Source: Tubulanus polymorphus
Taxonomy: Eukaryota; Animalia; Nemertea
DNA length: 64,000 bases
Direction of reading: 5' to 3'
Assembly: GCF_964204645.1 (NCBI RefSeq)
Contig: NC_134033.1
Span: forward strand, 14,950,655 to 15,014,654
Part shown: positions 8,601 through 45,550 of the stretch, in pieces
Layout: every line of letters starts with the position of its first letter
How positions within the stretch are numbered: position 1 is the stretch's first letter
Notes under the pieces: generated by a model
Databases searched by the model: none
What the model saw: the letters and a program-made list of their open reading frames with translations, nothing else
Told to the model about the DNA's origin: nothing
Position numbers and translations under genes: made by a program

Positions 8601-8637
<37 letters not shown>

Positions 8638-8916
8638 AAATTCGCGACGCTTTTAAATAAACTGACCCAGAATAATTCACACGTAACGCTAGTTGTTGAT
8701 TGATTATTATGCAGTTTTACTGGCTCGAGACGATGATGATATGTAATAATAGGATATTCCGTGTCTAATGCCGGGTACACGTTACTCTCATGATGGAGCA
8801 CTGATGATAATCGGTACTCTCCTCGAAGATTGATGCGGTTCAAAGATATTTGGTGCCCCTCTTGCCTCGCACCAGATCAGAGGAAATTTGTGTACCTCTA
8901 CTCGGCAAAGATATTA

Positions 8917-9258
8917 CAGTGGAACCACGTTATAACGAACTCTGATACGACGATTCATCAGATTAAACAAATAGGGATCATTCATTAATTACGTACGCAT
9001 AAAATTTGAATTTTTCAACCCCCCCTCCCTCTCTGTACGCAAAATCGGCCATTTTTTTGTATACATTAAGCATTACAGTACGCAATTGCACTGACCCCTC
9101 CCCCTCCCCTAATGCGTACGTAATAAATGAATGACCCCATATGAAATCGTGTCCCGAATTAGAGAATTTAATTATTTTCATACTGGATATAACAAACTCT
9201 CGATTATAATGAACAGATTTTCTGGTCTCCTGAAGTACGTTGTAACGAGTTTCCGCTG
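8917..9258. mobile_element. Tc1/mariner-pogo-like MITE (TA TSD) with nested MITE at 8974-9138
   Basis: Outer TA-CAGTGGAACCACGTTATAACG ... CGTTGTAACGAGTTTCCGCTG-TA. Inner element has GGG(A/G)TCATTCATT TIRs and an ATA TSD. Confidence 0.72.
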
Positions 9259-11144
9259 TAGGTGCACCTCTTAACAACAATCGCGAGATATTTGGTGTGC
9301 CCATGTAAAATGGTGTACCTCGCGGAATTGATTCGATGTGCCCCTCGTGGTGTACCCTGGGTCAGTTATAAGCTTACAGTGTTTCTATCTCAGGTAAATA
9401 ATAACCCGTTCGATTATACAGTTAGTTTACATCTGGTAGCTTACAGGCTGCGCGAGAGGGGTGGCTTTAGACGTGCTGGAGACACTTCAGCTACACTCGC
9501 GCATTTCCAACTGGCAAGCAAACAACATTAATACTCTCAGAATTGCATGAAATGCCTTTAAAATTCTGAATTTTCTGGAGGAAATCACCAACTCTCTCCA
9601 TTTTCGTGCCTAGCACTTGATGGAAGTAACATTTACAGGCTGCCAACCTCTGAAAAGGACCATCAGTAACAAACTGAATTTAATTATCAGTAACTAAATG
9701 ATCCTATCAATTAGTAATCAACAGTAAGACCCTCAGTAACATCTTTCATATTTCTGTTCAAATTAATCAGTAATCAACAGTAAGACCCTCAGTAACATCT
9801 TTCATATTTCTGTACGCTTGCAACATATTTCTTGTTATAAAATACTAACAAATACTGAAAATACTAATAGATACTGAAAATCAGGAACAGATGGCAGCTC
9901 TGCACTCCGGATTGACCTTTGGTATGGCCCCCCGTACAGTGCACCCCTCTCAACCGACTAGACACCAACCACACTGTTCTAACTGTATAATCTATAAGGC
10001 TTTTAACAAGTTGTCCCATTTAGTAGTAGTTCTATAATCAGTAGTTGTTTTTAAACATTTTCAAAGCAAACTCATAGCAGTTTCCGACCACGGTTCTACG
10101 CGCGACAGAATCCGAATTCGGTTTTTATCGAACTCGCCGCGTGTTGAATCGGGTCGTCTGCTCTCAAGACGCAATAAATATGTACGAAAACCGTAATAAT
10201 ACATTGTATTTAATGAAGAAAAAAATTAATACACATAAAATTGGTTTTTTTTTCACAATTAACAGCACTTAATATCTATCGGTAGTACAGTATGCATTTC
10301 TTGTCAACAGAATTCTTACAGATCAGTGAAAATCCGGATTTTATCTTTTTCCCTGCCGGGAGTTCGTGATAATCAGTAAAAAGATGGGGGAATATGATTG
10401 TATTTGAGTTTTCAGTGTCTTATTGTTCTTACTGGTGACGAGTGGCATGAGGAACCTCTCGACAAGAAACAGCCCTCAATGAGGATGTCTTATAATCTTA
10501 ACAGGGTATATTTGAATTTTAGGTCCCTTGATGTTCTAGCTGGTGACGAGTGGCACAAGGAACATCTCGATAAGAAACAGCCCTCACTGAGGATATCTTA
10601 TAATTTAATCAGAAAATTTTTGGTCAGGGGTCAGGGAATTATCAGGGTATCTAGGATTCCCCGATCTGTAAGAACCTGATCTTAATTCAATGATCATGAT
10701 CATGAGTCAGAGTCATTCAACTTTGATTTCTGGATATTTTGCATAAAACTCATAAAACTTTAGTCTTTACTGACAAGAAAAGCTAGTCTCACAAGAAACG
10801 AAAATTACTCCTCTCCCTCTCTCCCTCTCCCCTATCATGTAGAGTCTTTCTAGAATTGAGGTTCTTATTTTACAGGGAGAATTACTCTTTGACCGAGAAA
10901 GAGAACGTACTTTTTAACGTTTTTACTCGTACAAAAGCAAAGAGTTCATTTAGTGCGTAACAATTATTTACAAATGATGGACAGAAAATTTATGCGATAC
11001 TCTCAACAGAAAACCGTCTGAATGAGGCTGGAACAGTTCCGGATGAGGCTGGAGCAGTTGCCGTTTAACTGATCAGCCCTCCGACTAAAGCCATGGTTTG
11101 CAACAGAACGTACATTAGTCTTTAGCTGAAGTGAGCGATATCAG

Positions 11145-11290
11145 GGGCCGCAGTTGCTCAAAGGTTGGTTAAAGATAACATTGGTTTAAGATAACCGGTG
11201 GATAAATACCATAGCAACAACGGACTTTTAAATGTCACTATTTTAACTATACACTGGTTAGTTCTGACCACACTTTAGAGCAACTGGCCC
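11145..11290. mobile_element. MITE, CAG TSD
   Basis: GGGCC..AGTTGCTC / GAGCAACTGGCCC termini flanked by CAG. Related copies at 23453-23664 and about 29350-29469. Confidence 0.72.
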
Positions 11291-12779
11291 CAGCAATTTT
11301 GGTGGAGAAAGGTAGCACTTTTTAGCGAATTGCGCCCATGACAGACATTGTGACGGCCAATAATGATCTGTCAAACCGTAACAATAATCTACCGTTAAAT
11401 CACAATGTCATTCATGCACAAGGACATTGTCCAGAAGTGATGTGTGTTTGGCTTTTATTACAAATGCTGTAACAAAATGGCTAACAAGTCAAAAAGCAGC
11501 ACATTTTTGTGAAAAGCAAGCAGTTAGTTGTCCAAAAAGTCGCGCCGAGTGGACTCACTACAAACCATGGAAGCGGTGATATCGACCTGATCAGTCACTC
11601 CAACTGGAGCACCTCAGCCTCTCCGACTTTCCCCCCTCTCTATCCAGAGTCTAACACTACACGTGTATTTGCGTGAATTTAAAAATCTACGAAACGAAAA
11701 GCTTTAAAAAAAAGAACGAAAAAAAAAAAAAATTGATACTTTCTTCACATCAAAAAAACACATAAAATTCTTTACATGTTACATTATGTCGAGTTAAGAT
11801 ACCGTAACCATAGCGATGAAAAAATTATCATTGTCATATATCGTAGCAAGCGGTGAAGATAATAATGAGAATCGAATTTTTTTTTCGTTTTCGAAACGTT
11901 TGAAATGATAATTCGCCCACGTTTTCGGTTACATTGTTGCCACATTATCGTTGCCATATCAATAAATATATAACGTTAAAGCCGTTTATATCAATGAATC
12001 GAGGATAGTTTGAGGCGTTCGCGAGCCGTCAAACTAAAAACCACACAACACCATCGTAGAGACCAGGCACTCCGGATCATCTCCTCTTCGTCCGGAGCTC
12101 TCCAGAAATCCTATCGGGATTAGGCATCCACGAGCTGGAGAACTGGCTCCCAATCCGTCTCCGACACCTGGAAACACTAGATGGCGTTGCGTATCAGTTT
12201 TAAAAATATCGTTAATCGGTTAATCGTAGTCCGAGGTCAAGGTCATCATGTGTCGTCGCCATTGGTCGGGTCGCCGTCGGTTGTTTTGGAGTCGAAGAAA
12301 GACCGCACGTAAATTTCGTCGCGTCGATGATCGATTCAATCGGTGACAGAATCAGACAGGGTTCAAAATACTACTCAAAAACTAAACCACACGCTTAAAA
12401 ATTCATCATAAATTCACCTTAAATTCATCATAAATTCACCTTAAAGCCGTTGAACTTTTCTTTAACCTACAATTTTCTAACCTACAGTTTTTTTAAATGC
12501 CATTGCGGCTAATTATTACGTTTTTTTTTTTCACGAGAGACACAATTTTTTTTCTAAAAAATCAGCGATATTACACGAAGAACTGGTTTTCTTAGTAAGA
12601 GAGAAAAGAATTCTTATCTATTTACAATTTTCGGTATCACAAAAATGCGTTTTAGATTTTTATGTATGTATAAAAATATTCACAATGAGATTTTGTTTGT
12701 ACAGTTTTTACCGACTGCTTTTCTCAGCTTACAACCACGTTTATTTACTCACATGTTCTCTGCGTTCAATAAGGTAGTT

Positions 12780-12977
12780 TTCTGCGTTCATTTACTCAGT
12801 TCACTGCGTTCATTTATTCACATGTTCTCTGTGTTCAATTACTCAGTTCACTGCGTTCATTTACTCAGTTCACTGTGTTCATTTACTCAGTTCACCGAGT
12901 TCATTTACTCAGTTCACCGCGTTCATTTACTCAGTTCACCGCGTTCATTTACTCAGTTCACCGCGTTCATTTACTCA
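12780..12977. repeat. 22-bp minisatellite
   Basis: Unit CGTTCATTTACTCAGTTCAC(T/C)G. Confidence 0.85.
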
Positions 12978-13268
12978 AGTTTTTATAAAGCATTTATAAA
13001 TATTCGAACGCCGAAATTTACACAGAATCTACGTAACACTCAAAAACTCTAAATATCAAACAACGCGAAATCCAGTTCACACAAAAAACAAGCAGTAGAC
13101 ATTTTGAAAAAGAACTAAAAATCTTCGCATTTCGCTATTAGTAAGTAGTATGAATATTTTCAGTAGTTAGCGTTGAAGGGTCTAACAAACTAATTCTGAC
13201 TCGGGGGAGGGGTATAAACCCTGCCTGATATCTCTCACCCTCCTCTCTCTCTTTCTTTCTCTCTATCT

Positions 13269-16200
13269 TTATTTCTCTCCGTTGACCATCTGTGATTCTT
13301 TTTTCTCCGACGTGCCGTTCTCTTTACGTCCGTTCCTTGGCGCCGTCTGCTGTTGTTGTTTGCGGACAGGTGGCGCTCTTTGTTCTTTCGGGGTATGGTC
13401 GTCGCCGCCGCCGGCCGCAGCAGACGGTTCTTTACTATTCTTACCGCTAGGTGGCACCGACGATTTACCGTTAATCTGCGTTTTGTCGGAGCGCGGCGGA
13501 GGTGCGGAATTTCCGCGCACGCCGCGATAGTTCGATACGCTATTATCCGTTTCCGTTCCCGACGTCGGGCCGTTGTTGCCGCGGTTACTGCTGCCGCCCC
13601 GGTTTTTGTTTCTACGGCGACGTCTACGACGACTCTCATTGTTGCCATCCATCGATGAAACACTTTCTGTAAACGCAATAATTTCTCGTTAATAAATAAT
13701 CTCATTCAGGACCTCGCGAGGTTGGTCTGTTCATACTAATACAAATACAAATATATGCGTTTTTGAAGATAAAATAACGAGGCTTGTTTCAACTTTATAT
13801 CCGGAGATAAAGTTAACAACAACAGACCTTGATCCTGACTGGTAACACTAGAGATTTCTTGTTGATTATCTAATACAGTATCATCATCATCAGTTACACG
13901 CCTACGAGTTCCGTCATTATGTGATACTACAAATACAAACAATCAATCAATAATCAATAGTCAGTTCGGGGGGGGGGAGGGGGTAAATGAGTAAGTACCC
14001 ATGCATCAAACAGCACTACATACATACTACTTAGTTAGTGTTAGACTGAACAGTTAAATTGAATACCACCAGGGGGAGTTACACTGTTACACATCACGCA
14101 TATACTAGAACCCAGTTATCAGAATTGCTACAGTCCGGGTAGGAGGAGAAACAACAACACATACGCATTTCCTGTCTGGGGAAGAGAGCTCAGAGGTCCA
14201 GTTCAGGGAAGAGAGCTCAGAGGTCCTGTTTGGGAAAGAGAGCTCAGAGTTCCTGTCTGGGGAAGGGAGCTCAGAGGTCCAGTTCAGGGGAGAGAGAGCT
14301 CAGAGGTGCTGTCTGGGGAAGGGAGCTCAGAGATGCGGTTTGGGGAAGGGAGCTCAGAGGTGCTGTTTGGGGAAGGGAGCTCAGAGGTCGTGTCTGGGGA
14401 AGGGAGCTCAGAGGTCGTGTCTGGGGAAGGGAGCTCAGAGGTGCTGTTTGGGGAAGGGAGCTCAGAGGTGCTGTTTGGGGAAGGGAGCTCAGAGGTGCTG
14501 TCTGGGGAAGGGAGCTCAGAGGTCGTGTCTGGGGAAGGGAGCTCAGAGGTCCTGTCTGGGGGAGGGAGTTCAGAGGTCGTGTCTGGGGAAGGGAGCTCAG
14601 AGGTCCTGTTAGGGGAAGGGAGCTCAGAGGTCGTGTCTGGGGAAGGGAGCTCAGAGGTCGTGTCTGGGGAAGGGAGCTCAGAGGTCGTGTCTGGGGAAGG
14701 GAGCTCAGAGGTCGTGTCTGGGGGAGGGAGCTCAGAGGTCGTGTCTGGGGGAGGGAGTTCAGAGGTCGTGTCTGGGGAAGGGAGCTCAGAGGTCGTGTCT
14801 GGGGGAGGGAGCTCAGAGGTCGTGTCTGGGGGAGGGAGCTCAGAGGTCGTGTCTGGGGGAGGGAGCTCAGAGGTCGTGTCTGGGGAAGGGAGCTCAGAGG
14901 TCGTGTCTGGGGGAGGGAGCTCAGAGGTCGTGTCTGGGGGAGGGAGCTCAGAGGTCGTGTCTGGGGAAGGGAGCTCAGAGGTCGTGTCTGGGGGAGGGAG
15001 TTCAGAGGTCGTGTCTGGGGAAGGGAGCTCAGAGGTCGTGTCTGGGGGAGGGAGCTCAGAGGTCGTGTCTGGGGGAGGGAGCTCAGAGGTCGTGTCTGGG
15101 GGAGGGAGCTCAGAGGTCGTGTCTGGGGAAGGGAGCTCAGAGGTCGTGTCTGGGGGAGGGAGCTCAGAGGTCGTGTCTGGGAGAGGGAGTTCAGAGGTCC
15201 TGTTAGGGGAAGGGAGCTCAGAGGTCGTGTCTGGGGAAGGGAGTTCAGAGGTCGTGTCTGGGGAAGGGAGCTCAGAGGTCGTGTCTGGGGAAGGGAGCTC
15301 AGAGGTCGTGTCTGGGGAAGGGAGCTCAGAGGTCGTGTCTGGGGGAGGGAGTTCAGAGGTCGTGTCTGGGGAAGGGAGCTCAGAGGTCGTGTCTGGGGGA
15401 GGGAGTTCAGAGGTCGTGTCTGGGGAAGGGAGCTCAGAGGTCGTGTCTGGGGGAGGGAGCTCAGAGGTCGTGTCTGGGGGAGGGAGTTCAGAGGTCCTGT
15501 TAGGGGAAGGGAGCTCAGAGGTGCTGTTAGGGAAGGGAGCTTAGAGGTGCTGTTTGGGGAAGGGAGCTCAGAGGTGCTGTTTGGGGGAGGGAGCTCAGAG
15601 GTCGTGTCTGGGGGAGGGAGTTCAGAGGTCCTCACAGTAATTCACCACAAAAGGAAGCGTATACACAAGCAGGTCATGTCTGGGGAGATTCAGTTATTCA
15701 CCACCAGGGGGAGTAACTACACCACTACACAGATAGCTGACAGTTACCGATATTGGTTCTGTCTCTGTCGCTGACTGCTGCTGCTGCGGCGGCTGCTGGT
15801 GCTGGTGTAATACCCATCATACGATTCAGTAAGTACCCACCTCCTCCTCGATCGGTATAGTCTCCTCTGTGGTTGTCGTGGTAACCGCCTCGATGGCTGT
15901 CATGGTAACCGCCGCGGTGATCGTGGTAACCGCCGCGATGGTTGTTGTCGTAGTAACCACCACTCCTCCGGTCGCCGTAGTGATGATCTGTTAGTAGAAT
16001 AGATATAATCGATTCATGCACGGGTTAAACTTCTCAAATCCAAACGGTGCGAGTTAGGTCTATTTCACTAGTTATCGTGCAGAAAATCAAGAAATACACG
16101 GCCATCCCCAAACGCACACACTCTCGGCAAGGATCAGAATCTGATGGCATCGCTACACTTAGCTACCGCACAAAACCCTGCCACAGAGACCATGCGCTCA

Positions 16201-19200
16201 GCTACATGCACAGGTTTACCGCAAGATAACCACGGCACCAATAAGATTGTCCGTTGTATAATAATAGCTGTTTTCACATGTAATCTATAATCGGAAAACC
16301 CCGCGATAAAATTAAACCGGATTTCCGATTGCCCGATAATGACAGCAGTTATCATGTCGCGCAGGGTTTCGTACGAAAGTGAATCCCAACGCTATCAGAT
16401 TCGAATACATGCCGAGGGTGATTGGCGCGCGAATGTTCCCTCTTTTGAGCCAAAGTGTCCTATTTGAAATAACTTTTTTTCACTTCATCAATTACGTGGT
16501 TCATACGCTAAGATCTAGCCTCGGAATTTCAGCGGTTTTTTTTTTCATTTTAGAAGCCCTCACTACAGCGCGTGAAAGTATAAAATCTGTAATCTAATGC
16601 ATGCGGCCGTTTTCAAGTGAAATGCAGAAAATGTTCTAAGAATTCAGATGCAGGACGAGGGAGAGAGTTTTGTTAAGATAGTTCCGGTAACCGGACAATT
16701 TTGAAATTATTTTCATCTGACCAAATAATTAAGAAAATAACATGCAATATCAATCATTCTACACGCGGTCTACAAGAAAATACTCAGGGTCCCTACAGAT
16801 CGGTCATTCCGGGATATAAGCAGTTTTAACAGGATCCCTACAGACAGATCAGTCATTCCTGGATATAATCAGTTTTCAAAGAGTTTTAAAGGAGAAAATT
16901 TCGATTTCGGGGAAGTGTCGACATCACCTTCATATCCCAATTACAGTAGACTTCTCCTAAATCCTTACTGTTCATCTCAGTAAACGATTAATTCAGTGGT
17001 TTTGTAAACAAATTTCCATCTTTTATACAATTAGTTTGAAAGTTTCTCATTTTGTAACTGCCTAATTTGGTAAAAAAATTCCTGGCTCCAACTGTACCGA
17101 TTAAAACAGCTGTTTAGGGGCAGTTTACAGTACAACTACTAGAGAAAAATTTCTAATTTACTATTTCTAAAAATTGAAGAATTTTTGAAAGAGTTTCAGG
17201 CATTTGCTGAAGTAATTTTCAAGCAGCCTTTAAGTATTTCCCGTTTAGAAGGAGTTTTTATAGAATCAAGGATTCATAGGGACCCTGTAGATAAACAACT
17301 GTTCGGTAGTCATGGAAACTCGTGTTTATTAGCAGACGGACACAGACCTGGATCTCTGCCCGGAAATCTTCCGTAACGGCGGGCACCACCGCGACCTCGA
17401 CCTCGTCTGCTGAGAATACTATCGGTCAGGTAACCGGAGTGATGTCGTTCTTCCTGCGCGGTCACCTCCGCCGACCAATCGGATATTCGCTGCTGTTGTT
17501 GCTGGTTACCAGCAGGGGGCGTTGCGTTACTATCAGCTAAGCCATATATAAATACAAAGTTCTATAGTCAAGGTTAACGAGGAGCGACGACTAACGTTTC
17601 AGGGACACCGACTAATTTTCAATACCCTGAAGTGTCCTATAACAGGGTGATCACTTTCTGTCCATTTACAATGTCCCTGATTTTTCCAAATTCCCTGAGT
17701 GAATCTAAGGAAATTCAAGGTTTAAAATGTTACGATTCATTCATTTTTTATGAATCATGTATTGGAAACACATCGGAAGTGATATCCAAATTCAACGTGT
17801 TTTCCGAGGTTTTCATCAAATTTCCTGAGTTTTTTTCCCTGATTAGATTTTTCCGATTCCCTGAGTTTAGGTCAATGGCCACCCTGCATCACCAGGGACA
17901 ACAATTGTTCAGTTGACAATTCGGTTTTAGGTAGAGAGTTAAAGAGGACCAATAGAGTGGGAGAGAGAGAGAGACCGTTTTCCCTAGCTAATGATTACTG
18001 GGGTTGTAGCAGTCGAGACTAAGGCAAAATTCAGCTCTGAGGATTTTACCAGAAAATGCAAGCACTATTCTAAATAAACCCTATCCTTAATTTCTCGAAA
18101 AGCAAGCACTTTTCAGAATTCGTCAGACTTGCTATAAACCCCCTAATTCGCCGCGACACACTTCACCAGGTTCTGGAGTAGAGATAACACTTACCGCTGG
18201 CTCTCTCGTGCCTCTCCTGATTCCATCGACCACGCCCGCGACCTCGACCCCGTCCTCCGCGACCTCGACCTCTCTCGTCTAAATACGGATCGTTGCTTCC
18301 CGCCCTGACAAAAACAACAACAACACGATAATTCAAACGATCAACTTCGATTAGTCAGTTAGTCCGTAGTCCGAATCAGTAAACCGGCCACTGTTATTCA
18401 CACCTAATTCCAAGATGGCCGACACTATTGAAATTACATGTATGTGATATTGTATTTGGCTAACAATAATAACTGCAGTTCACCCTGCCTGACTGTTTAT
18501 CATTTCTCCGCACAAACATTAATTTTCTTCCCAAATCCTTTGCACTAATGACACATCCCTGCTCCTGACTGCCCGAGAATTTGCTTGCTACAGAAAAGAT
18601 TTATTACCCGCATGGGCAGTTGCAGGATTTTTAAAGGTGGGGGTAAGGGTGTGCTCTGCTGCTCATCCCCAGGGCTCTTGCATCCAAATCACCTGCCCTG
18701 GATCCGCGCCTGAACCGAGGCGCGGCAAAGTCTACTGCATCTATAGTTTTTAGTTACCTTCGTTCTCTAGGAGGAGGGAAGTACGGACCCGGTTGAGGTT
18801 GACCCCCGATACTCTTCAACTGTTGATCGATTTCTATTTTTTCTTGCCTCAAAGCTTCGACTTCCTGCGAACAACGATTCCAAAACAGGTTTTCAAAAAC
18901 AACTCTCGAAACATTGTTATACGATAAGACTGACAAGAGACCAAGACTTACCTTTAAATGAGCTAAATGATATTCTAACAAAACTCGAGCGTTGCTGATA
19001 CTTTCAACTGTTCCGACGAATATAAACGGTACTTGCCCCTGTATACGATAAGAATACAGTTATCATTGATTTACATGGCGGCTGTATGCGATGAAAATAC
19101 ACTGATCATTAATTAACAAGGTCTCTGTATGCGATAAACATACAGTGATCATTAAGACATGATCTCTCTATATGTGATAAGAATACGTTGATCATTGACA

Positions 19201-22200
19201 GACATGATCTCTATATGTGATAAGAATACAGTGATCATCAATAGTGATGATCTCTGTATGCGATAAGAATACAATGATCATTGATAGACATGATCCCTGT
19301 ATGTCATTAGAATACAGAGATCATTGTTAGACATTGTCCTTGTATGCAATAGTAAAATCAGTGTTTATGAAATAACGCTGAAGCAAAACCAGAATATCGT
19401 ATCATGCTTTTATATAATAAACTATAAGCATTGAATTTATGAAATAATAGAAGAAGGGTTCAACTGAAGGGTCTGGTCTGATAAACTGAGGTTTCATGAC
19501 AAAATCAGTAAAACAAATGTTTATAAATCATTCATCCCAGTCTATAAACCAAGCATTTACAATAAATGTATATGTATGATACAGAAATACAGGAATAATA
19601 TGAATTAAGCTTAAATGAATTGAAAGAATATCAATTGAAAAACGAAATCTCAATGAAATAAATCTTCGAGAACCGATTGAAATCATTGAAAATCACTCGA
19701 ATGAAAAGAACCTTACCAATCTAGGACCAACACCCTAAAATATATTCGAATACCCGTCAGTAATGAAAGCGATGATTTGAAAATGCACCGAACCGCTCCG
19801 AAGATTTTACGGATGAAAGCAACAGTAGCTACGAAAAGGCGGACTCCGGATCAGACTAAATATGAAATGTTTTTCTTCTTTTTTCCTTCGAAACTCGATC
19901 TTCCCTTTTTGTTGACATAAAATCTTGGCTCAAAAAATCTAACAATCGAAATAAACTAATAATTGTAAATTTCCGAAAATACCAAATTTGAACCCGATGA
20001 TTAGTCTAAAAGCTGAAAATGGTTTTGTGGGGGAACTCAACACTACAGAATCCGAAAAGACTTTTAATCACACAACAATTTGCAACAACTACCACAAGCC
20101 TTACGAAAGATTGAACGTATGGTCGAGAAAATACAAGAGAAAACCAGGGATGAAAAGATGAAGGGATGAAAACAGCCCATATTGAAAAAGTCGGAAAATA
20201 TTTTCAAAAAAAAAGAATTTTCTCGGGGAACAAAAATCAGTAACTTTTAGCCAAAAAACTTCCTTTTGGTCAAAATGTTAATAGTTTGGGCCTGAATTAG
20301 AGCCGCTTTTTGAATGAGACGCCGTATTGGTTTCTCCGACTCCACAGTTGTGCTAACAACTGCCGAAAACCATCTTAACGAGCACTCCTAACTACGGAGC
20401 GCTCCGATGTGACGCCCGCGATTTAGGTGATTAAAGCAATTGAGGTGATTTACACTGTTCTCAGGAATAAAGAAAATGTTAGAAAAGGTCGGAAATCCGT
20501 CCATGGTCGGAAGATTTTCATCCCTGACATATCCAAACTTACCGTTCCATAAGGATCGGCATAATTCTAAAAAGAGACAAAAAACAATTTTTTCAATATT
20601 GCATTCGAAAATCTCGAAACTGATCGGAAAAATGAAGAATTCAAGTAAACACTGACCTCCACTTTCAGATCATCTCCGTCCTGGTCGTTATCGCCCTCTA
20701 TTTTCACACGAACGACGCCCGATTTATCGACGATGTCCTGAATATTGCGACCGTTTTTTCCGATGACTTTAGCTGCAGAAAATACAAAACGTACTCGTAC
20801 GGAATCTTGGCATCAAAACTGTTTGCTAATTGCTTAAAAGGTGGAAAGTCTAACTCGGGTCTGATCAGCGATTTTTTAATCGGGAACATTTTCAACACGA
20901 GTTTACTTATGGTCGCAACAGATTGATCGCAGACCGATCGTAAGCCGAATCACGAGGATAGAACAAGTTCTATTTCCTCTAACTGATCTTAAGGTTGTAG
21001 CCAATCAGCGACGAGTTATGCATCAGATGACTTTTAGCGCCGAAAATGGCGAGTCAACAAACCATGAGACTCAGCGATGATCAAGTTGTAGTAAACCTGT
21101 TAAGATCGTTAGACAAACAAATCAGCAATCAGCGGTCACATGTGCACTACCGCTGTACTTACGACAATCTAGTTGGGTCAAAAGTCGACCTGAGCTAGAC
21201 TAATGGATAACCGACTATCTCAGCCTCGTTGTAATCGTGGTATTCATCGCCAACTTGAAAACCAAATAAGCAACGTTGAAACGGTGAAATACTAACCGAT
21301 TAATTCACGCGGAACGTGTATCGTTTCTTCAGCAAATTCTAACATATTTCTAGCAGTTTTTACAGCGTGTTCAGTCTATGAAATAAACAATAACATTTCA
21401 CATTACACTCTCCATTTGAGATCATCTATCATAAAGGAGGACGAGGGTCTCGATCAGCTATTTACCCCTAAAATTTAGATCATCTAAATTTTAGGGCGTT
21501 TAAAAGGAATTCAAGCTCAGGACGATTCAATTCAATATTTATTCATCGTGAAATCTTGCGCGCGCTTGTGGATAAAAGGAAAAAAATTTTTTTTTTTACA
21601 AAAAGAAAAGATGGTTTATGAAATGTGTACGTATGATGACGGCGAGAAAATAAACACTAATGCAAATTACCAAATTTAAGACTTGTGTAGTTTAAGTTTG
21701 TTTGTAGGTAAAGGAATAATATAAAGACTAAGCACCATAGGCCTATGCAGATAGCTGGACCGTAATTGGATAGCTGCAGACGTACCTCACCGCATACTTT
21801 GAACGTACACGTATTCTCGTCCAGCTCGATAGAAGTGACGCCCTCCACTTTACGAGCCTGCTGTATATTAGCGCCGTGAGTACCGATAGCTAAACCCATC
21901 AGATCTTCGCGTACGCTGAACTCTTCCATGAAATTCGCTCGACTGTGTAACTTAGTACTCTACAAGAACACGATTAATTCAGCATATCCGTCAATTTCAC
22001 AAACGATCCACAAAGAAGTTCAGGATTAACTTTTACTATTATTTGGACACTTAACTTCTTAACATCTTTTATTCTTAACTTATTTCGATATTATCGATTA
22101 TTTCATTTTCTCGGAAGATTATGTTTTAAAGGCATTTTTGTAAAACGAATGAACAGAAAAGAGATTGCAATCGACATCGGAGCACTCTTCATGTCATTTC

Positions 22201-39255: not shown

Positions 39256-40310
39256 ATGAACCCTATGGGAGGTTTCCTTTGATCTTGATTTTCCACGTGT
39301 GGTAATTAAATGTCTACGGGAATGTGTTATAAAACCGTAATTCATGCATAGCGGATGCGGACCGCCTGCATTCATTGTTCCTCAGTTGGTGTAGTAACGA
39401 ATATTAGTTCCAATTGTGCTGGGTTCAATTTCACGAAAAAGTTTTTTTTCATTTAGTTGCTTCACGTTTTCTCAACGAGGTCGACAAATTCAAAAACGAC
39501 CGTTTTTAAGCGGAAACTTTTTCGCGAAACTGAACGCGGTTTTTCGATGTTGAGAATTAATTTTAAGTTGATAATTTCGATGTTTGTAGCAGCAGCAGCA
39601 GCAGCACGCACGCGGAGCCAGATTATTTCTGTATTATAATTATCGCGGCTAGGATTGATTGAAGAAATAAATTCGGTCCATTTTCTATGTTGTCAGATGT
39701 ATGTACGTATGCGTGTATGAATTCGGGGGGGTTAGTCAACGATGACTCCCGCACAATTATTCTGTTATGGAAAATATATAAATAAAATAAAGATGAATGC
39801 TTCTTTTTAAAACGGTGTTTTACTTCTGTTTATTGTTTATCTTGCTTTGCGTCATTGGAATCTTGGCAAGTTTTGCAACAAGTCTACTGTTTTACTATAT
39901 ATGCGGACACATCCTACATAGTGCACCAAACCATCTCGCTGTATTATGGAAGAAAATCTTGAATTCTTTAAAAAAATCTTTTATATTTATTAAGGGGTCA
40001 TAACCATAAGCTACGTCTACATTAGCTCATTGCATCCGTCTTACAGACAATGGATGTGGGTTCGACTTAAACCTGCATTCACAGCGTCAACACTTGCTGC
40101 GGCTTCGGTAGAATGAATACAAGCAAAAAAGCTGTTTCGCGCAAACACAGGGTACACTCTTCTTGTTCGAGGTTTTCTAAAGTTTTATACATGATAAGTG
40201 TTTCTAGTGTCGTGTAGAATTGCTAAACCCTGGGTCTAAAAACCAAGTGTAGACTTACGTGTTTATTTACGTGCACTTGTCAGGCTCAAGAAAATCCACA
40301 TTTGATATTA

Positions 40311-40628
40311 CAGGGTTCCTACAAATCAGTCGAGAATTCAAGGACTTTTCAAGAAGAAAATTTCGAGGAGTGTATGCATCACTTTCATATCTCGACTACT
40401 GTTGACACCTCCTAAATCGGTACTGTTTTACTCAGTAAACCATTTAATCAGGTGGAATCTGTGTATATAATAACTAGGCCTTGAGCCAAAAAATTGCCAA
40501 TTTCTCAAAATTCAAGGAGTTTCCAAGCACTTTTGGGCATTTTGCTCAAATTCAAGGATATTCAAGGACCTTGAAAAACATTTTTGGTTTAGAAGGAGTT
40601 TTCAAGGAATCAAGATGTAGGGACCCTG
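40311..40628. mobile_element. Non-autonomous TIR element CAGGGT(T/C)CCTAC, 5-bp TSD
   Basis: Flanked by TATTA on both sides. Related copies near 2802, 16785-17287, 43195-43578, 53480, 55030, 56475 and 61696-61868. Confidence 0.7.
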
Positions 40629-40962
40629 TATTACAACCAATTTAGTGTATATACTATGTCAACTCATTGGTCGTCATTTCTAATACCGCCTTCACTGATA
40701 CGGTCCTGTGGCTGGAGTTAAACAATGTTTGACTGTATAAAGAATTCAGTTGAAAATGAACCGCAAACCGGGGAGAAGGGAACAAATCCAGAACGATTCC
40801 TTTAAATGCGATCCGCCTCTAAGGACAGAAAGAGCCATTGAACGAAACTGACCTATGTCCTCTCAAGTCAAGTGGAATAAGGAGAGAAATTAATTCATCA
40901 ACTCGCTATTAATTCCTTCTGTACAATGACAATTTATTTATTTCCGCTTTGTTTGTCATAAA

Positions 40963-43900
40963 TTATTCTTTATCGGATTTCTTTTCAACTTCTTTCTTGC
41001 TTCCTCTTAATCTACCAGTACGTCTGGCAGCGATCAGACCGACCTGAAAATAAACCGAGTAACATTCAGTATACACTCTACAATATCAGACACAGAGGGT
41101 CGATGGGGAGTTGGTCAATGCCCAGTGCTTGACAACATGGTTAAAATTCAGTTCAAAGTGAAGAACTTTTATTTTTATCTCAACGCTCAGTGCCCAGTGC
41201 TTGACAACATGGTTAAAATTCAGTTCAAAGTGAAGAACTTTTATTTCCTCATCGCGTTGGAATTTTAAGGTTTACTTTAAGCTTCAGGAAAATTTTCTTT
41301 ATAAATGTTGATATTTCGAAACGCTCAGTGCCCAGTGCTTGACAACATGGTTGAGTTCAGTTCAAAGTGAAGAACTTTTATTTCCTCATCGCGTTTAGTA
41401 AGTAGTACGTAGGTCTGTGTTAGAGCAATTATAAATTTTTCTTGACGGTTTTTGATATTTCGAAACGCTCAGTGCCCAGTGCTTGACAACATGGTTAAAA
41501 TTCAGTTCAAAGTGAAGAACTTTTATTTCCTCATCGCGTTCTCAAATCTGGGATCCGAAATTCCCATAAGAATAAGATGTCTTTGCAAATAAAGCCAGCT
41601 GCTATCATTAACTGATTTCTCGAATTGAAAATTAATATTTGTTGCTCAGAAACAGCCTCTAAATGTTCCACACGGGAGTTTTTTTCAGAGATAATGATAA
41701 GAAATCATCACGGCAACAAGATATCAACGTTCGAAGAATTCAAAACAATACGCTTACCTTTCGTCCGTGTGATGTATCTCTTCGGACGGTCGAAGCGTGA
41801 CCAATATGTTGATGGTTACCACCACCGTGAGGATGCTCAACGGGCTGAAAAATAACAACAAACACAACGTGGATTACAACGAAATAAATTGCAGTTAGAA
41901 AACTAAACATGTTTCTGAAAATCCTGATTTAAGTTAATAGATATTTCAGCGCACAGTTGTTGACAACATGGTTGAAATTTAGTTCAAAGTGAAGAACTTT
42001 AATATCCTCATCGCGTTGAAATTCTAACATTTAAAATTTAAATTATCTATATATTTCTTAATCATAAACGCTCAGTGCCCAGTGCTTGACAACATGGTTG
42101 AGTTCAGTTCAAAGTGAAGAACTTTTATTTCCTCATCGCGTTTGTTAAATGTAAGTAGGTCTTAAGAAGTATAGTTCAAAATTCTTTTTAAAGGGTTTTG
42201 ATATTTTGAAACGCTCAGTGCCCAGTGCTTGACAACATGGTTAAAATTCAGTTCAAAGTGAAGAACTTTTATTTCCTCATCGCGTTGAAATTTTAAGGTT
42301 AACTTAAGCTTCATGATAATTTTCTTTATGAATTTTGATATTTCGAAACGCTCAGTGCCCAGTGCTTGACAACATGGTTGAGTTCAGTTCAAAGTGAAGA
42401 ACTTTTATTTCCTCATCGCGTTTGTTAAATGTAAGTAGGTCTTAAGAAGTATAGTTCAAAATTTTTTTTAAAGGGTTTTGATATTTTGAAACGCTCAGTG
42501 CCCAGTGCTTGACAACATGGTTAAAATTCAGTTCAAAGTGAAGAACTTGTATTTCCTCATCGCGTTCTCAAATCAGTTTTAAAATGAAAGAATAAAACTT
42601 CGCAGCTTTTAAAAAACATGAGAATAATAATTGAATGTTGCTCAGAAACAGCCTCTAAATGTTCTACACGAATATTTCAGAGAAAAGTGAATAGAAAACA
42701 TCAGCGCAACTTGAAAATCTAATCTTAAAATTATCTAGAAAATAAATTTGTCCTCAGGAAAAAATTAGAGTGAGAATTTACTAATCACGAGATATCAGTG
42801 ATTGATATTTCATCATAGGACACAAAAAAAAATGTTTATAACAAACTACAAAATATCGTCGAACTTCTAATAATTTATATCAAAATTAGTCCTCAGGAAA
42901 AAATTAGAGTGAATATTTTCATAATCATAAATGATCATACATTAAGTTTTTTCATCATAGGACTGTTGATAAAAGGAGCGTGACAAGACGGGTTGGTTTA
43001 GCGGCAGGGTTACTTACGTTCATAGCAACACCACGAACTTTAGGCCAACAGTTTCTCTTGGCCTTGTATTTGTGATAAGCACGACCGGCTTTCAACATAG
43101 GTTTATCGATACGTCCTCCTCCGGCAACAATTCCTGTCAAAACAAAAATACGATTAAAAACTTTTTCGAAACAGTCATCTCCACATTATTTGAACACGGT
43201 ACCTACAGATCCGTGATTCCTGGATACAAAAGTTCAAGAATTATCAAATTATCCCAATTACTGTAGACACCTCCAATATCGATACTGACAATCTCAGTAA
43301 AAGATGGTTTTATAAGCAAATATTTAAACTTGACTACCCCCTACCTAAAATCAGTTTCTATTTGAGTAACCTCCTATTAGGGCAAAAACTGTACCGATTT
43401 AGGCATAGTTTACTGTACAGCTTCAAACTAGACAAAAATTTCTGATTTCCAATTCCTCAAAATTGAAATTGAAGGCGTTTCCAAGGAGCATTATCCCCTA
43501 ATCGGAAGAGTTTTAACCACCTTCAAAGCACTTTCCAATTAGGAGTCATTACAGAATCAAGAAGTCGTAGGAACCCTGTAACAATGTTCATTACTAAGAA
43601 TACAGATCAGTTAAGCTGTGATGTAATACTAACCGACCATGGCTCTGTTAGCAGACGGAATTACACGTTTACTTCCCGACGGAAGTTTCACTCGCGATCG
43701 CTTCGTATCGGGATTGTGAGAGATGACGGTGGCGTAGTTTCCCGACGCTCTCGCCAGACGACCTCGGTCACCGGTCTTCTCTTCTAAACAGCAGACGATC
43801 GTACCCTCGGGCATCGCTCCGACGGGGAGGATATTACCGATCTGTAATACAGCTGAAATACAATCAATCTAAACGCGTTAATTTCCAGCGAGACAACAGT

Positions 43901-44673
43901 CATTTCAGTTTGGTCGGAGGCACTTCAATCATTTCTACCTTTTAATACCAGGGTTACTAAGGTTAGACGTACAACTGACCACCATATTTGTCGGATCCTC
44001 AATTATTCAATCAATTTGAAGGAATCCTATTGTCCCTGGTATCTCCCTAACCCCTGACCTAATTTATAAGATATCCTCAGTGGGTGCTATTTGTTAAATC
44101 AAGAAGTTCCGTGTGCCGCTCAACACACCAATGAACATCAGACAAAACATTAAAATTCCCTGATTTAAATGAAGCCGGAATTTGTGATTTTTCTTTCCAC
44201 CGGAAAAACTAAAACTGGAATTTCTGGATCCGAGACCCAAGAGTTTAGACTTCGTGTCAATGTCACGCTTGTGTTATTAAGGGTTGGGGGTTAGGCATTT
44301 TAAACAATCCCTAACCATCTAAAATCAATAAACATTTCAAAACATTGTCAATGACTCTGAAAAATAAATCAAGAATGGTGAACGTGAACTGACCTTTCTT
44401 TCCACAGTAAACAAACTGCCCGGTGTACATGCCCTCGGCCGCCAAAAAAGTCTCGGTTCTCATTCTATACTTGTACGGATCACGGAATCGAACCCTACAC
44501 AACGGAGCGCCACGTCCGGGATCGTGAAGGATCTCTTTCACGACGCCCTTGATGTAACCATTCCTCTCGGCGTAGTCGACCGGTCTCAGTTTAGCGGCGC
44601 CTTTGCGGTTTTTCGTATGCGAGCGGAAAACGCTGCCAGCACCTTTACGCTGACTTCTAATAACACGTCCCAT
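40963..44673 (-). CDS. RPL8: 60S ribosomal protein L8 (uL2)
   Basis: Coding exons 44673-44394, 43852-43634, 43133-43018, 41844-41758, 41043-40963 (783 nt, 260 aa). [51 protein letters not shown] near 40933-40938. Confidence 0.97.
41118..41175 (-). pseudogene. Truncated copy of the dual-guide snoRNA
   Basis: Both guides are retained, but the C box, D box and terminal stem are lost. Confidence 0.7.
41183..41539 (-). ncRNA. Three intact tandem box C/D snoRNAs (dual guide, SNORD88/snR76 + SNORD37 type) at 41183-41257, 41321-41394, 41465-41539
   Basis: Sense strand: ACGC stem, C box ATGAGGA, TTCTTCACTTTGA-A-CTGA (D'), AGCACTGGGCA-CTGA (D), GCGT stem. Guides are complementary to the conserved 28S stretch UGCCCAGUGCUCUGAAUGUCAAAGUGAAGAA. 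Confidence 0.9.
41641..41717 (-). ncRNA. SNORD95: Box C/D snoRNA, SNORD95 homologue
   Basis: GTTGC/GCAAC stem, C box GTGATGA, D' CTGA, 3' end AGAGGCTGTTT-CTGA-GC as recalled for human SNORD95. Complementary to 28S GAACAGCCUCU. Confidence 0.85.
41946..42016 (-). pseudogene. Diverged copy of the dual-guide snoRNA
   Basis: C box and SNORD37-type guide are retained. D' is mutated to CTAA, the SNORD88-type guide is mutated and the 3' stem is lost. Confidence 0.65.
42068..42565 (-). ncRNA. Four intact tandem dual-guide box C/D snoRNAs at 42068-42141, 42211-42285, 42348-42421, 42491-42565
   Basis: Near-identical to the 41183-41539 copies, with all boxes, guides and stems intact, separated by 60-70 nt AT-rich spacers. 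Confidence 0.9.
42637..42710 (-). ncRNA. SNORD95: Second SNORD95-type snoRNA
   Basis: GTTGC/GCAAC stem, degenerate C box CTGATGT, and the same D guide AGAGGCTGTTT-CTGA. Confidence 0.75.
42749..42822 (-). ncRNA. Box C/D snoRNA with 18S rRNA guide (copy 1)
   Basis: TGTCC/GGACA stem, C ATGATGA, D' CTGA, C' GTGATTA, guide CACTCTAATTTTTTC then D CTGA. 15-nt complement to 18S GAAAAAAUUAGAGUG. Confidence 0.85.
42888..42964 (-). ncRNA. Box C/D snoRNA with 18S rRNA guide (copy 2)
   Basis: AGTCC/GGACT stem, C ATGATGA, same guide and D box as copy 1, with a divergent interior. Confidence 0.85.
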
Positions 44674-44930
44674 TGTCTGGCTGTAAAATATAATTCATAA
44701 AAGCACATGTCATCCTTGTATCATACACGATGTGTAAACCCGGAACCTTTTTGACGGTCAACGTTCGAGGTCAATTTCTAACCGTAAAAAGTATAATTAG
44801 CCACGAAATATTCACATAAAACCATTAATAAATTTGTTAACTATAATAATAATCGGCGATTAATAAACGATGTTAGTTCTAATTACTCTAATTTAGCGGA
44901 TTTTATCGATGTATCGTTCTGAAGCCATAC

Positions 44931-44962
44931 CTGTGATAGTAGCCGACGTTTGGTAAAGGAAG
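44931..44962 (-). promoter_or_regulatory. RPL8 non-coding first exon with 5'TOP/TCT-type initiator
   Basis: Minus strand reads CTTCCTTT followed by a short exon ending CAG|GTATGG. This is typical of ribosomal protein genes. Confidence 0.7.
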
Positions 44963-45550
44963 TAACTGAGATGTCGTAAAACTGATCAGAATTATCAAAA
45001 CTCGCGAAGCGCATTTAATTTTCGAATGAACACAAACTGACGATATCTTATGAATATCTAAAGATTTATTTCGTTAATTTTTTTGCAAAATATACAAAAA
45101 TGTTTTTTAAAATTATTTTCTAGCCTCCTCAATCGCTAGGGACCGGTAAGTATTTTAAAACCCGTGGAACACGTGGGCACTACCAAAACCTCAAACCAAA
45201 AAACCGAACTACATTTAATGTGTACACCTATGATTTTTGAAATTGCTCGGTCCTGAAGAAATGTAAACCTTCGATTCAAAACCTTTGGTAAATGTTCTCG
45301 AATTTTGAGAGATCGGTGCGAGAGGGTTAGTATATGACAGACCGCTCCCTAGCTCTAGGTCGATACGGTTCAAGCGTCTTAATTCTCAATACATTTCACT
45401 CTTCTACTTCTCGCGTATTTTCTCGCCCGTTTTGGGCCCAATCTTGAACGTTATGTACCCCGATACTAAAATATTGTCATCAGAATAAACAATAAATAAA
45501 TTTGAATTTTGATAACGGTGAGCGAACGAACCGCTCCCCTCGGTGCGCCG

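What the first reader, a model, noticed from the sequence alone, without database searches (positions are those of the whole stretch)
41118..42964. Polycistronic intronic snoRNA arrays in RPL8: 13 box C/D units in two adjacent introns
Seen: intron 41044-41757 holds 3 intact and 1 truncated dual-guide units plus a SNORD95-type unit. Intron 41845-43017 holds 4 intact and 1 diverged dual-guide units, a SNORD95-type unit and two 18S-guide units. All lie on the RPL8 sense strand with 40-100 nt spacers. Established: vertebrate intronic snoRNAs are normally one per intron and released by exonucleolytic trimming, while polycistronic clusters in yeast and plants need endonucleolytic (RNase III/Rnt1-type) cuts. 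Inference: this animal must either cleave between units or accumulate multimeric sno-lncRNA-like species. Either would be an unusual snoRNA expression system for an animal.
Basis: partly seen in the sequence, partly recalled or inferred. Interest (0 to 1): 0.88.

Follow-up and report, generated by a model that had tools for sequence, protein, structure and literature searches.

The report
Tandem snoRNA gene arrays in RPL8 introns
Two neighbouring introns of the ribosomal protein L8 gene of the ribbon worm Tubulanus polymorphus carry 11 intact and 2 decayed box C/D snoRNA genes; this is a real but extreme case of a known layout (several snoRNAs per intron) that also occurs in this gene in an annelid and a mussel.

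Summary
RPL8 (uL2) lies on the minus strand. Spliced RNA contigs confirm its introns 41845-43017 and 41044-41757.

These introns hold 13 sense-strand box C/D units, of which 11 are intact:
- 7 copies of a dual-guide unit aimed at 28S C2747 and A2764 (the human SNORD88 and SNORD37 sites)
- 2 SNORD95-type units aimed at 28S A2325
- 2 SNORD36-type units aimed at 18S A836
- 2 decayed copies of the dual-guide unit

A rule-based scan of all 64 kb found only these 11; shuffled sequence gave about 0.2. An independent DNA run supports the copy number. Units are 94-100% identical across the two introns, while most spacers are 48-87% identical.

One RNA run shows unit-to-unit spacers at the same per-copy depth as the units and about 8-fold above the unspliced flank. 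"Unusual for an animal" is overstated. Intronic snoRNA clusters are published for Drosophila, and I found two units per RPL8 intron in Ridgeia and Mytilus.

The scan noted similar arrays on other DNA of this genome. I verified those at IPO5 and PSMD3. Verdict: a new member of a known kind, of moderate interest.

The parts
40963..44673 (-). RPL8 (uL2) host gene. Coding exons are 44673-44394, 43852-43634, 43133-43018, 41844-41758 and 41043-40966, with the stop codon at 40965-40963.
   Evidence: The exon translations are 100% identical to P0275, uL2-like isoform X2 of Tubulanus polymorphus. RNA contigs of X2 cover the exons at depth 9,000-19,600 and splice exactly at both snoRNA-bearing introns.
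41845..43017 (-). Upstream host intron (1173 nt). In 5'-to-3' order on the RNA it holds C2, C1, B2, A9, A8, A7, A6 and A5d.
   Evidence: Joint 41844/43018 with CT..AC ends in the X2 RNA contigs; units.
41044..41757 (-). Downstream host intron (714 nt). It holds B1, A4, A3, A2 and A1t.
   Evidence: Joint 41041/41756 (cut +2) with CT..AC ends in the X2 RNA contigs; units.
42886..42966 (-). C2, a box C/D unit with C box ATGATGA, D box CTGA and a 6-bp terminal stem. Its D guide makes 15 perfect pairs to 18S and selects A836, the human 18S Am668 (SNORD36) site.
   Evidence: site table in PMC11550049.
42747..42823 (-). C1, a paralogue of C2 with the same 15-bp D guide to 18S A836. Overall identity to C2 is 77%, but the boxes and the D guide are identical.
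   Evidence: These two are the only copies in the genome.
42634..42713 (-). B2, a box C/D unit with a slightly degenerate C box (CTGATGT), D box CTGA and a 5-bp stem. Its D guide makes 13 bp (2 G-U), 11 of them perfect, to 28S and selects A2325, the SNORD95-type site (human Am2815).
41639..41719 (-). B1, a paralogue of B2 with C box GTGATGA, a 7-bp stem and the same D guide to 28S A2325. The last 36 nt or so are identical to B2, while the 5' half has diverged.
   Evidence: These two are the only copies in the genome.
42490..42566 (-). A9, an intact dual-guide unit with C box ATGAGGA, D' CTGA, D CTGA and a 5-bp stem AACGC/GCGTT. The D' guide makes 13 perfect pairs and selects 28S A2764. The D guide makes 11 perfect pairs and selects 28S C2747.
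42347..42422 (-). A8, an intact dual-guide unit of the 76-nt sub-type, which differs only in the loop after D'.
42210..42286 (-). A7, an intact dual-guide unit, 100% identical to A2 and A4.
   Evidence: The contig of exactly this unit has DNA depth 208 and RNA depth 235.
42067..42142 (-). A6, an intact dual-guide unit, identical to A8.
41941..42017 (-). A5d, a decayed copy. The C box is kept, D' is CTAA, the D guide has 3 changes and no longer matches 28S, and the terminal stem is lost. It is the 3'-most unit, 96 nt from the 3' splice site.
41464..41540 (-). A4, an intact dual-guide unit.
41320..41395 (-). A3, an intact dual-guide unit of the 76-nt sub-type.
41182..41258 (-). A2, an intact dual-guide unit. 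Its 3' end is 138 nt from the 3' splice site.
41110..41186 (-). A1t, a truncated and decayed copy that abuts A2. It has no C box, its D box reads TTGA and it has no stem. It lies 66 nt from the 3' splice site.

Best explanation
These are genuine intron-encoded box C/D snoRNA genes of the palaeonemertean Tubulanus polymorphus. They are carried in the sense orientation by two adjacent introns of the very highly expressed RPL8 (uL2) gene and multiplied there by local tandem duplication.

Shown:
- There are 11 intact units in three families, each with box C, box D and a 5-7 bp terminal stem that gives a kink-turn geometry.
- Their guides pair perfectly with the worm's own rRNA at four sites that are methylated in human rRNA.
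- They are the only genes of these three families in the genome.
- An independent DNA sample supports the copy number.
- Units are held identical while most spacers drift.
- RPL8 already hosts the SNORD37-type and SNORD95-type guides in molluscs and an annelid.

Inferred mechanism: the units have no promoter of their own and are transcribed as part of the RPL8 pre-mRNA. After splicing and debranching, snoRNP proteins assemble on each unit and exonucleases trim up to the protected units. Inner units cannot be reached from the intron ends, so they need cuts in the short, A/U-rich, unstructured spacers. The nuclease is unknown and is not directed by RNase III-type hairpins. Between the near-identical A units this step seems slow, so multi-unit RNAs (unit-spacer-unit) accumulate to detectable levels. 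The decayed copies at the 3' edge of each array are the usual fate of edge repeats.
For: - Anatomy and guides. The A D guide makes 11 of 11 pairs and selects 28S C2747. The A D' guide makes 13 of 13 pairs and selects A2764, 17 nt downstream, the same spacing as human Cm3701 (SNORD88) and Am3718 (SNORD37) in PMC11550049. The B guide selects 28S A2325 and the C guide makes 15 of 15 pairs to 18S A836.
- Specificity: 11 hits in 64 kb, all here and all on the sense strand, against 0.2 in shuffles.
- Folding: every intact unit closes with its terminal stem.
- Uniqueness: each family is found only at this locus.
- Host: introns and expression are confirmed by spliced RNA contigs at depth 14,600-19,600, and the protein is identical to P0275.
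- Copy number: DNA run X1 gives unit depth 208 against single-copy depth 34-37, where the assembly predicts a multiplicity of 5.0.
- Constraint: A units are 94-100% identical between the introns, against 48-87% for all but one spacer pair. In B and C only the boxes and the active guide are conserved.
- Spacer-bearing RNA: A-A spacers run at 34-42 per copy and units at 47, against 5.5 for the intron's unspliced 3' flank and 0 for the B/C segments.
- Spacers: 69-88% A+T, with minimum free energies of -0.4 to -1.9 kcal/mol, no better than shuffles.
- Orthology: SNORD37-type and SNORD95-type units lie in RPL8 introns of Liolophura, Littorina, Mytilus and Ridgeia, and their 5' halves align with unit A.
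- Same habit elsewhere in this genome: IPO5 intron and PSMD3 locus.
Against: - No read-level RNA data exist. The only RNA run is held as contigs, which show neither ends, strand nor small RNAs, so no mature 75-81-nt species has been seen and the spacer signal could in principle come from antisense or other transcripts.
- No Rfam family reaches its gathering score.
- The C box of family A is non-canonical (ATGAGGA, with G at position 5) and its C' box is degenerate, so assembly efficiency is unknown.
- The second guides of B and C have no rRNA target.
- Methylation at the four predicted sites has not been measured in this animal.
Confidence: 0.8

Rival explanations
1. The stable and possibly functional product of the A array is a multi-unit RNA, a sno-lncRNA-like concatemer capped by snoRNPs at both ends and studded with internal ones. 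It is an end product, not a processing intermediate. Monomers would then be a minor product.
For: In RNA run X2, units and A-A spacers have equal per-copy depth (47 against 34-42). That is about 8-fold above the unspliced flank of the same intron, while segments carrying B and C are undetectable. Introns with two snoRNAs are the prerequisite for human sno-lncRNAs (PMC5054931). The A-A spacers lack any structure that could direct RNase III.
Against: A standard RNA-seq library loses 77-nt RNAs, so equal depth of unit and spacer says nothing about how many monomers exist. The spacer depth is only about 0.3% of the exon depth. Both guides of unit A are under strict conservation for rRNA sites, which fits a working methylation guide. 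The B-A and C-B spacers vanish, so cleavage activity is present in these introns.
Confidence: 0.2
2. Only one or a few units per intron are productive, for example those best placed relative to the branch point. The other copies are silent passengers of recent duplications.
For: In vertebrates efficient intronic C/D expression depends on a position about 70 nt upstream of the 3' splice site (PMC5054931). Here the intact units lie 138 to about 1040 nt from it. Two copies have already decayed.
Against: The copies nearest the 3' splice site are the two decayed ones. Seven A units stay 94-100% identical across two introns, while the spacers between the introns are 64-87% identical. At even 13% neutral divergence the chance of zero changes in 77 nt is about 2e-5. 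B1/B2 and C1/C2 keep exactly the boxes and the active guide while the rest diverges. Gene conversion restricted to the units is an alternative that cannot be excluded.
Confidence: 0.15
3. The array is an assembly artefact (a collapsed or expanded repeat), or the matches arose by chance.
For: The units are near-identical repeats with a 140/280-nt period, a classic source of assembly error. No Rfam match reaches threshold.
Against: Contigs from DNA run X1 carry many SNPs relative to the window, so X1 represents another haplotype or individual. X1 shows the unit at 5.6-6.1 times single-copy depth against 5.0 expected. RNA contigs contain three different unit-spacer-unit junctions. The shuffle control gave 0.2 hits against 11 observed. 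Orthologous units exist in other phyla.
Confidence: 0.02

Closest known systems
Intronic snoRNA gene clusters of rice and Drosophila melanogaster (Liang et al. 2002; Huang et al. 2004, 2005; cited through PMC2780460 and PMC2246290)
   Same: Several snoRNA genes sit in one intron of a host gene, in the sense orientation and without their own promoters, often as paralogous isoforms. Intron size is set by the number of snoRNAs.
   Different: By the title of the 2004 paper, the Drosophila clusters are chiefly box H/ACA. Here the arrays are box C/D, up to 8 units per intron. They are dominated by near-identical tandem copies of one dual-guide unit and lie in a ribosomal protein gene of a nemertean. 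I could not read the primary papers, so finer comparison rests on citations and on my own recollection of the abstracts.
Human sno-lncRNAs (Yin et al. 2012; reviewed in PMC5054931 and PMC10557570)
   Same: An intron with more than one snoRNA. The sequence between the snoRNAs survives because snoRNPs block exonucleases from both sides. Spacer-containing RNA is detected here as well.
   Different: Human cases have two snoRNAs with a long unique insert of about 1 kb or more, and the product has non-snoRNA functions. Here there are many units with 33-98-nt spacers. The ends and lengths of the RNAs are unknown, and the B- and C-bearing parts do not persist.
Polycistronic snoRNA precursors of yeast (Rnt1/RNase III-dependent) and plants
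   Same: Several snoRNAs are made from one precursor that must be cut between the units (PMC10557570).
   Different: The yeast units are independently transcribed and are separated at Rnt1 stem-loops. Here the precursor is a spliced intron and the spacers are unstructured. Short A/U-rich spacers resemble the plant clusters more closely (from general knowledge).
Human SNORD88, SNORD37, SNORD95 and SNORD36 (28S Cm3701, Am3718, Am2815/Cm2824; 18S Am668; PMC11550049)
   Same: The predicted target nucleotides and the local rRNA sequence match, and the two A-unit sites are 17 nt apart as in human.
   Different: Here one RNA carries both the SNORD88 and SNORD37 specificities. The host genes differ. 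Sequence similarity is too low for Rfam membership. B lacks a guide for the second SNORD95 site.
RPL8-hosted SNORD37-type and SNORD95-type snoRNAs of other spiralians
   Same: Same host gene, sense strand, same guides. The 5' half (C box, D' guide, D' box) of the SNORD37-type units aligns with unit A. Ridgeia and Mytilus also have two units in one intron.
   Different: Those species have 1-2 units per intron, spaced 400-1300 nt apart, with a canonical C box and no SNORD88-type or SNORD36-type guide in RPL8. Tubulanus has up to 8 units per intron with 33-98-nt spacers.

Membership tests
Box C/D methylation-guide snoRNA | Box C (RUGAUGA) near the 5' end and box D (CUGA) near the 3' end, brought together by a short terminal stem (kink-turn) | tested here: met
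   All 11 intact units have a C box with at most 1-2 deviations, CTGA, and a 5-7 bp stem directly flanking the boxes. Family A has G instead of U at C-box position 5, which would give a G-U instead of a U-U pair.
Box C/D methylation-guide snoRNA | At least 10 nt of complementarity to rRNA ending next to box D or D', placing a known modified nucleotide opposite the fifth position | tested here: met
   11, 13, 11-13 and 15 bp to the worm's own 28S and 18S, selecting C2747, A2764, A2325 and A836. These are the human Cm3701, Am3718, Am2815 and 18S Am668 contexts. Shuffles gave 0.2 hits per window.
Box C/D methylation-guide snoRNA | Accumulates as a discrete 60-100-nt RNA bound by fibrillarin, Nop56, Nop58 and Snu13 | not testable with these tools
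   Only contig-level data from one RNA run were on hand. Such data cannot show small RNAs.
Rfam SNORD88 / SNORD37 / SNORD95 / SNORD36 families | Covariance-model score at or above the family's gathering threshold | tested here: not met
   No match at gathering score. The best scores were SNORD37 at 22.8 bits (threshold 45), SNORD88 at 23.5 (46) and SNORD36 at 22 (30), and SNORD95 was not listed. The units are functional analogues by target site. Sequence-family membership is not shown.
Intronic snoRNA gene cluster | Two or more snoRNA genes inside one spliceosomal intron, on the host's sense strand | tested here: met
   Seven intact units lie in intron 41845-43017 and four in intron 41044-41757. 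The intron borders are proven by spliced RNA contigs.
Intronic snoRNA gene cluster | Expression depends on host transcription, with no promoter for the individual units | not tested
   The 5' flanks of the units share no common motif, but no eukaryotic promoter scan or transcription-start data were available.
sno-lncRNA | The sequence between two intronic snoRNAs is retained in a stable RNA | tested here: inconclusive
   Three different A-A spacers are present in RNA contigs at 34-42 per copy, against 5.5 for the unspliced flank and 0 for the B/C part. The data come from one run and give no strand, ends or length.
sno-lncRNA | RNA ends coincide with snoRNA ends; no cap and no poly(A) tail | not testable with these tools
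   Contigs end at branch points of the assembly graph, not at RNA ends.
Rnt1/RNase III-processed polycistronic snoRNA precursor | Stable stem-loops in the spacers that serve as RNase III cleavage sites | tested here: not met
   A-A spacers fold at -0.4 to -1.9 kcal/mol with z-scores of -0.75 to +1.4. The other spacers are no better than shuffles.
Dicistronic tRNA-snoRNA (plant type) | A tRNA gene next to the snoRNA that provides an RNase Z site | tested here: not met
   ARAGORN finds no tRNA in 40000-45000.

The most novel reading that the evidence does not exclude
Tubulanus, and perhaps spiralians more widely, may use intronic polycistronic arrays as the main way of making box C/D snoRNAs. 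Units would be resolved by an animal endonuclease pathway acting on unstructured A/U-rich spacers, unlike RNase III/Rnt1. For homogeneous arrays such as RPL8-A, stable multi-snoRNP concatemers may have a role of their own.
Probability: 0.25. Interest if true: 0.65.

Novelty: new member of a known kind. Interest (0 to 1): 0.4.

Why it matters
The vertebrate 'one snoRNA per intron' rule and its splicing-coupled, position-dependent assembly do not hold here. Intact units lie 138 to about 1040 nt from the 3' splice site, and up to seven share one intron. Together with the other arrays in this genome and the two-per-intron cases in an annelid and a mussel, this suggests that a large branch of animals tolerates or prefers polycistronic introns. 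In such animals the nuclease that separates the units is unknown. The RPL8 array is a compact, highly expressed test case. It also documents an old host-guest link (RPL8 with SNORD37- and SNORD95-type guides across three phyla) and a guide fusion (SNORD88 plus SNORD37 sites on one RNA). None of this overturns current models, so the value is comparative rather than conceptual.

Tried and rejected
- Rfam at gathering score gave nothing on the window. The permissive scan gave only sub-threshold C/D matches and noise, such as a U7-like hit of 20 bits on the plus strand and some bacterial sRNAs.
- The representative-protein search with exon 1 returned mostly fragments and odd cluster representatives. 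It did not lead to relatives.
- The look-up of encoding contigs had no record for P0275 (the window's own gene) or P0308 (Gigantopelta).
- No Lineus RPL8 appeared in the top 120 of either protein search, so the nearest available nemertean was not compared.
- The primary papers on the Drosophila and rice intronic clusters (PMC1370813, PMC135747) are not held. Searches for snoRNA organisation in lophotrochozoans and for a Tubulanus genome paper found nothing relevant. Other literature look-ups were uninformative.
- Run X3 (the 2015 run with the same species label) matched only one exon, at 90-95% identity, and told nothing about the array.
- RNase III hairpins in the spacers were rejected, as was a tRNA-linked processing signal. 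No flank motif is shared between the RPL8, IPO5 and PSMD3 arrays.
- Dispersed retro-copies were rejected: all three families occur only at this locus.
- Genomic DNA contamination as the source of the RNA-run spacer signal was rejected, because single-copy B/C segments of the same intron have zero depth.
- Procedural points. I never built a joined spliced protein. The exons were searched as separate referenced rows aligned to a database protein, and then the database protein P0275 was used.
Full report
**What is there**

The gene is on the minus strand. Its five coding exons are 44673-44394, 43852-43634, 43133-43018, 41844-41758 and 41043-40966. They translate without a mismatch to database protein P0275, named by NCBI 'large ribosomal subunit protein uL2-like isoform X2 [Tubulanus polymorphus]'. 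P0275 sits on a contig of 16,481,795 bases, the length of the window's own contig. The animal is therefore the palaeonemertean ribbon worm Tubulanus polymorphus. This agrees with the best named hit of a neighbouring gene (NAA35, 60% to Lineus longissimus).

Spliced contigs of RNA run X2 join 41041/41756 (cut +2) and 41844/43018 with CT..AC ends. Their depth is 14,600-19,600.

**The units**

Read on the minus strand, the upstream intron carries C2, C1, B2, A9, A8, A7, A6 and A5d. The downstream intron carries B1, A4, A3, A2 and A1t.

Family A (76-77 nt) has this layout:
- a 5-bp terminal stem (AACGC/GCGTT)
- a three-base bulge and C box ATGAGGA
- a 22-nt stretch ending in the D' guide
- D' box CTGA
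- a degenerate C' box
- the D guide and D box CTGA

This is textbook kink-turn geometry, apart from a G at C-box position 5.

I took the worm's own rDNA from contig C12 and delimited 18S, 5.8S and 28S with Rfam. The guide matches are in the table below.

| Family | Guide | Pairing | Selected nucleotide | Human site |
|---|---|---|---|---|
| A | D | 11 perfect | 28S C2747 | Cm3701 (SNORD88) |
| A | D' | 13 perfect | 28S A2764 | Am3718 (SNORD37) |
| B | D | 13 bp, 2 G-U (11 perfect) | 28S A2325 | Am2815 (SNORD95) |
| C | D | 15 perfect | 18S A836 | 18S Am668 (SNORD36) |

The two family-A sites are 17 nt apart. Human 28S Cm3701 and Am3718 have the same spacing (table in PMC11550049). Sub-threshold Rfam matches of SNORD37 and SNORD88 fall on the corresponding halves of unit A.

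A5d and A1t are dead. A5d has a mutated D' box, three changes in the D guide and no stem. A1t lacks the C box and has TTGA in place of the D box.

**Is it more than chance, and is it real DNA?**

A rule-based scan (C box, D box, stem, at least 10 perfect pairs to own rRNA under the +5 rule) over all 64 kb and both strands returned 11 hits. These are exactly the 11 intact units, all on the RPL8 sense strand. Twenty shuffles gave 0-1 hits.

Each family occurs only at this locus in the 268-Mb genome. These are therefore the genome's only genes for these specificities, and they arose by tandem duplication and not by retroposition.

DNA run X1 differs from the window by many SNPs and small indels. 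It shows the unit at depth 208 against 34-37 for single-copy intron sequence. The assembly's mean 31-mer multiplicity for the unit is 5.0. The array is not an assembly expansion, and if anything that sample has one more unit.

**Signs of function**

Between the two introns the A units are 94-100% identical (A2 = A4 = A7; A6 = A8). The homologous spacers between the introns are 64-87% identical. With 13% neutral divergence, zero changes in 77 nt has a probability of about 2e-5. B1/B2 and C1/C2 are about 77% identical overall, yet their boxes, stems and active D guides are identical. Either purifying selection or unit-restricted conversion keeps many copies intact.

**How the RNAs might be released**

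The spacers are 33-98 nt long and 69-88% A+T. On their own they fold no better than shuffled sequence: -0.4 to -1.9 kcal/mol for the A-A spacers. There are no RNase III/Rnt1-type stem-loops and no tRNA.

Intact units lie 138 to about 1040 nt from the 3' splice site. The two units nearest to it are the dead ones. The vertebrate position rule of about 70 nt (PMC5054931) therefore cannot apply. Exonucleases working inward from the intron ends cannot free inner units, so cuts in the spacers are required (inference).

The one RNA data set adds a hint. After correction for repeat multiplicity, the depths in X2 are as follows:
- units: about 47 per copy
- three different A-A spacers: 34-42 per copy
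- contig across the unspliced 3' splice site of the same intron: 5.5
- segments bearing B1, B2, C1 and C2 and their spacers: no contig at all, although DNA run X1 covers them

Genomic DNA contamination cannot give this pattern. The simplest reading is that unit-spacer-unit RNAs from the A array outlast the rest of the intron, whether as slow intermediates or as sno-lncRNA-like products. The other spacers would be cut and degraded quickly.

The limits are serious. There is one run, held as contigs, with no strand, no ends and no small RNAs. The signal is about 0.3% of exon depth.

**Context in this genome**

Earlier first-stage notes of this scan list similar arrays on other DNA of the same genome: IPO5, PSMD3, PRRC2, RPN2/Pumilio and DDX6. 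I tested two of them.

In the IPO5 locus, four units of one C/D family (11-bp D' guide to 28S U1830) lie within 950 nt. They sit between two exons that I placed by homology, which means they share one intron. In the PSMD3 locus, six sense-strand copies of another family (guide to 18S U1098) lie within 6.5 kb. Whether all six share one intron was not checked. Multi-unit introns are therefore a habit of this genome.

**Context in other animals**

I fetched RPL8 loci of five other spiralians and scanned them with the same rules and with the four guide cores. All units found are on the sense strand.

| Species | Group | Units found in RPL8 introns |
|---|---|---|
| Liolophura | chiton | one SNORD37-type and two SNORD95-type units, in three separate introns |
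| Littorina | gastropod | SNORD37-type units in two introns |
| Mytilus | mussel | two SNORD37-type units in one intron |
| Ridgeia | annelid | a SNORD37-type plus a SNORD95-type unit in one intron, and two SNORD95-type units in another |
| Helobdella | leech | other guides, one per intron |

The 5' half of the SNORD37-type units (C box, D' guide, D' box) aligns with unit A. RPL8 is therefore an old spiralian host for these two guides. Two units per intron is not peculiar to Tubulanus.

What is peculiar to Tubulanus:
- the tandem amplification, up to 8 units per intron with short spacers
- the SNORD88-type second guide on the SNORD37-type RNA
- the SNORD36-type units in this gene
- the altered C box shared by all A copies

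**Comparison with published knowledge**

[quoted passage not shown] Two snoRNAs share an intron in Plasmodium (PMC2656528). Human introns with two snoRNAs yield sno-lncRNAs (PMC5054931; PMC10557570). Yeast polycistrons need Rnt1. I found nothing on snoRNA organisation in nemerteans or other lophotrochozoans.

**Verdict**

I file this as a new, extreme member of the known intronic snoRNA gene cluster kind, with a modest hint of multi-unit RNA accumulation. I rate the interest as moderate (0.4).

I built no joined spliced sequence. The exons were searched as separate referenced rows, and the database protein P0275 was used afterwards.

Noticed in passing
L021 (Ridgeia piscesae RPL8 locus) about 2549-2613, 3439-3498, 6282-6341, 7585-7641; L022 (Mytilus trossulus RPL8 locus) about 4850-4950 and 5270-5370: Other spiralian RPL8 genes also carry two box C/D units in a single intron. 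Ridgeia has a SNORD37-type plus a SNORD95-type unit in intron 1 and two SNORD95-type units in intron 3. Mytilus has two SNORD37-type units 424 nt apart in one intron.
   Followed up: partly
L016 4836-5785 (G000:C9:11626835-11627784), minus strand: Four copies of another box C/D family (11-bp D' guide to 28S U1830, terminal stem TTGCC/GGCAA) lie in one IPO5 intron, with a fifth copy at L016 645-702. This confirms in part the earlier first-stage note s1-503575.
   Followed up: partly
L018+L019 (G000:C6:10420000-10439999), joined positions 8432-14990, minus strand: Six near-identical box C/D units (10-bp D guide to 18S U1098) lie upstream of the PSMD3 C-terminal exon. Exon mapping was not done.
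   Followed up: partly
window 5245-7608 (+): NAA35 (NatC auxiliary subunit; Pfam Mak10 and TPR_NAA35) is encoded as one uninterrupted 787-codon ORF. It may be an intronless or retro-copied gene. The closest named relative is Lineus longissimus at 60%.
   Followed up: no
window 14230-15774, both strands: Three long overlapping ORFs (514, 454 and 412 codons) on both strands have no Pfam match. The cause may be unusual composition or an unrecognised element.
   Followed up: no
window 41120-41178 and 42288-42344 (runs X1 and X2): The sequenced individuals differ from the assembly inside the array. A DNA contig skips 57 nt at A1t. An A8-A7 spacer variant with four changes has about twice single-copy depth in DNA, which suggests copy-number or structural polymorphism of the array.
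   Followed up: no
window 41797-41835 (runs X2 and X3): Low-depth contigs match only this RPL8 exon at 90-95% identity and continue into different sequence. They represent RPL8 mRNA of another organism in X2. In X3, a 2015 run with the same species label, they suggest that the label covers a different lineage.
   Followed up: no
window 41397-41463 and 42143-42209 / 42423-42489, minus strand: The longer A-A spacer type keeps the block AGACCUAC-(U/G)-UAC just upstream of the next unit in both introns, and every A unit is followed by UC(G/A)AAAUAUCAA. These could be processing signals or simply part of the duplicated block. No such motif is shared with the IPO5 or PSMD3 arrays.
   Followed up: partly
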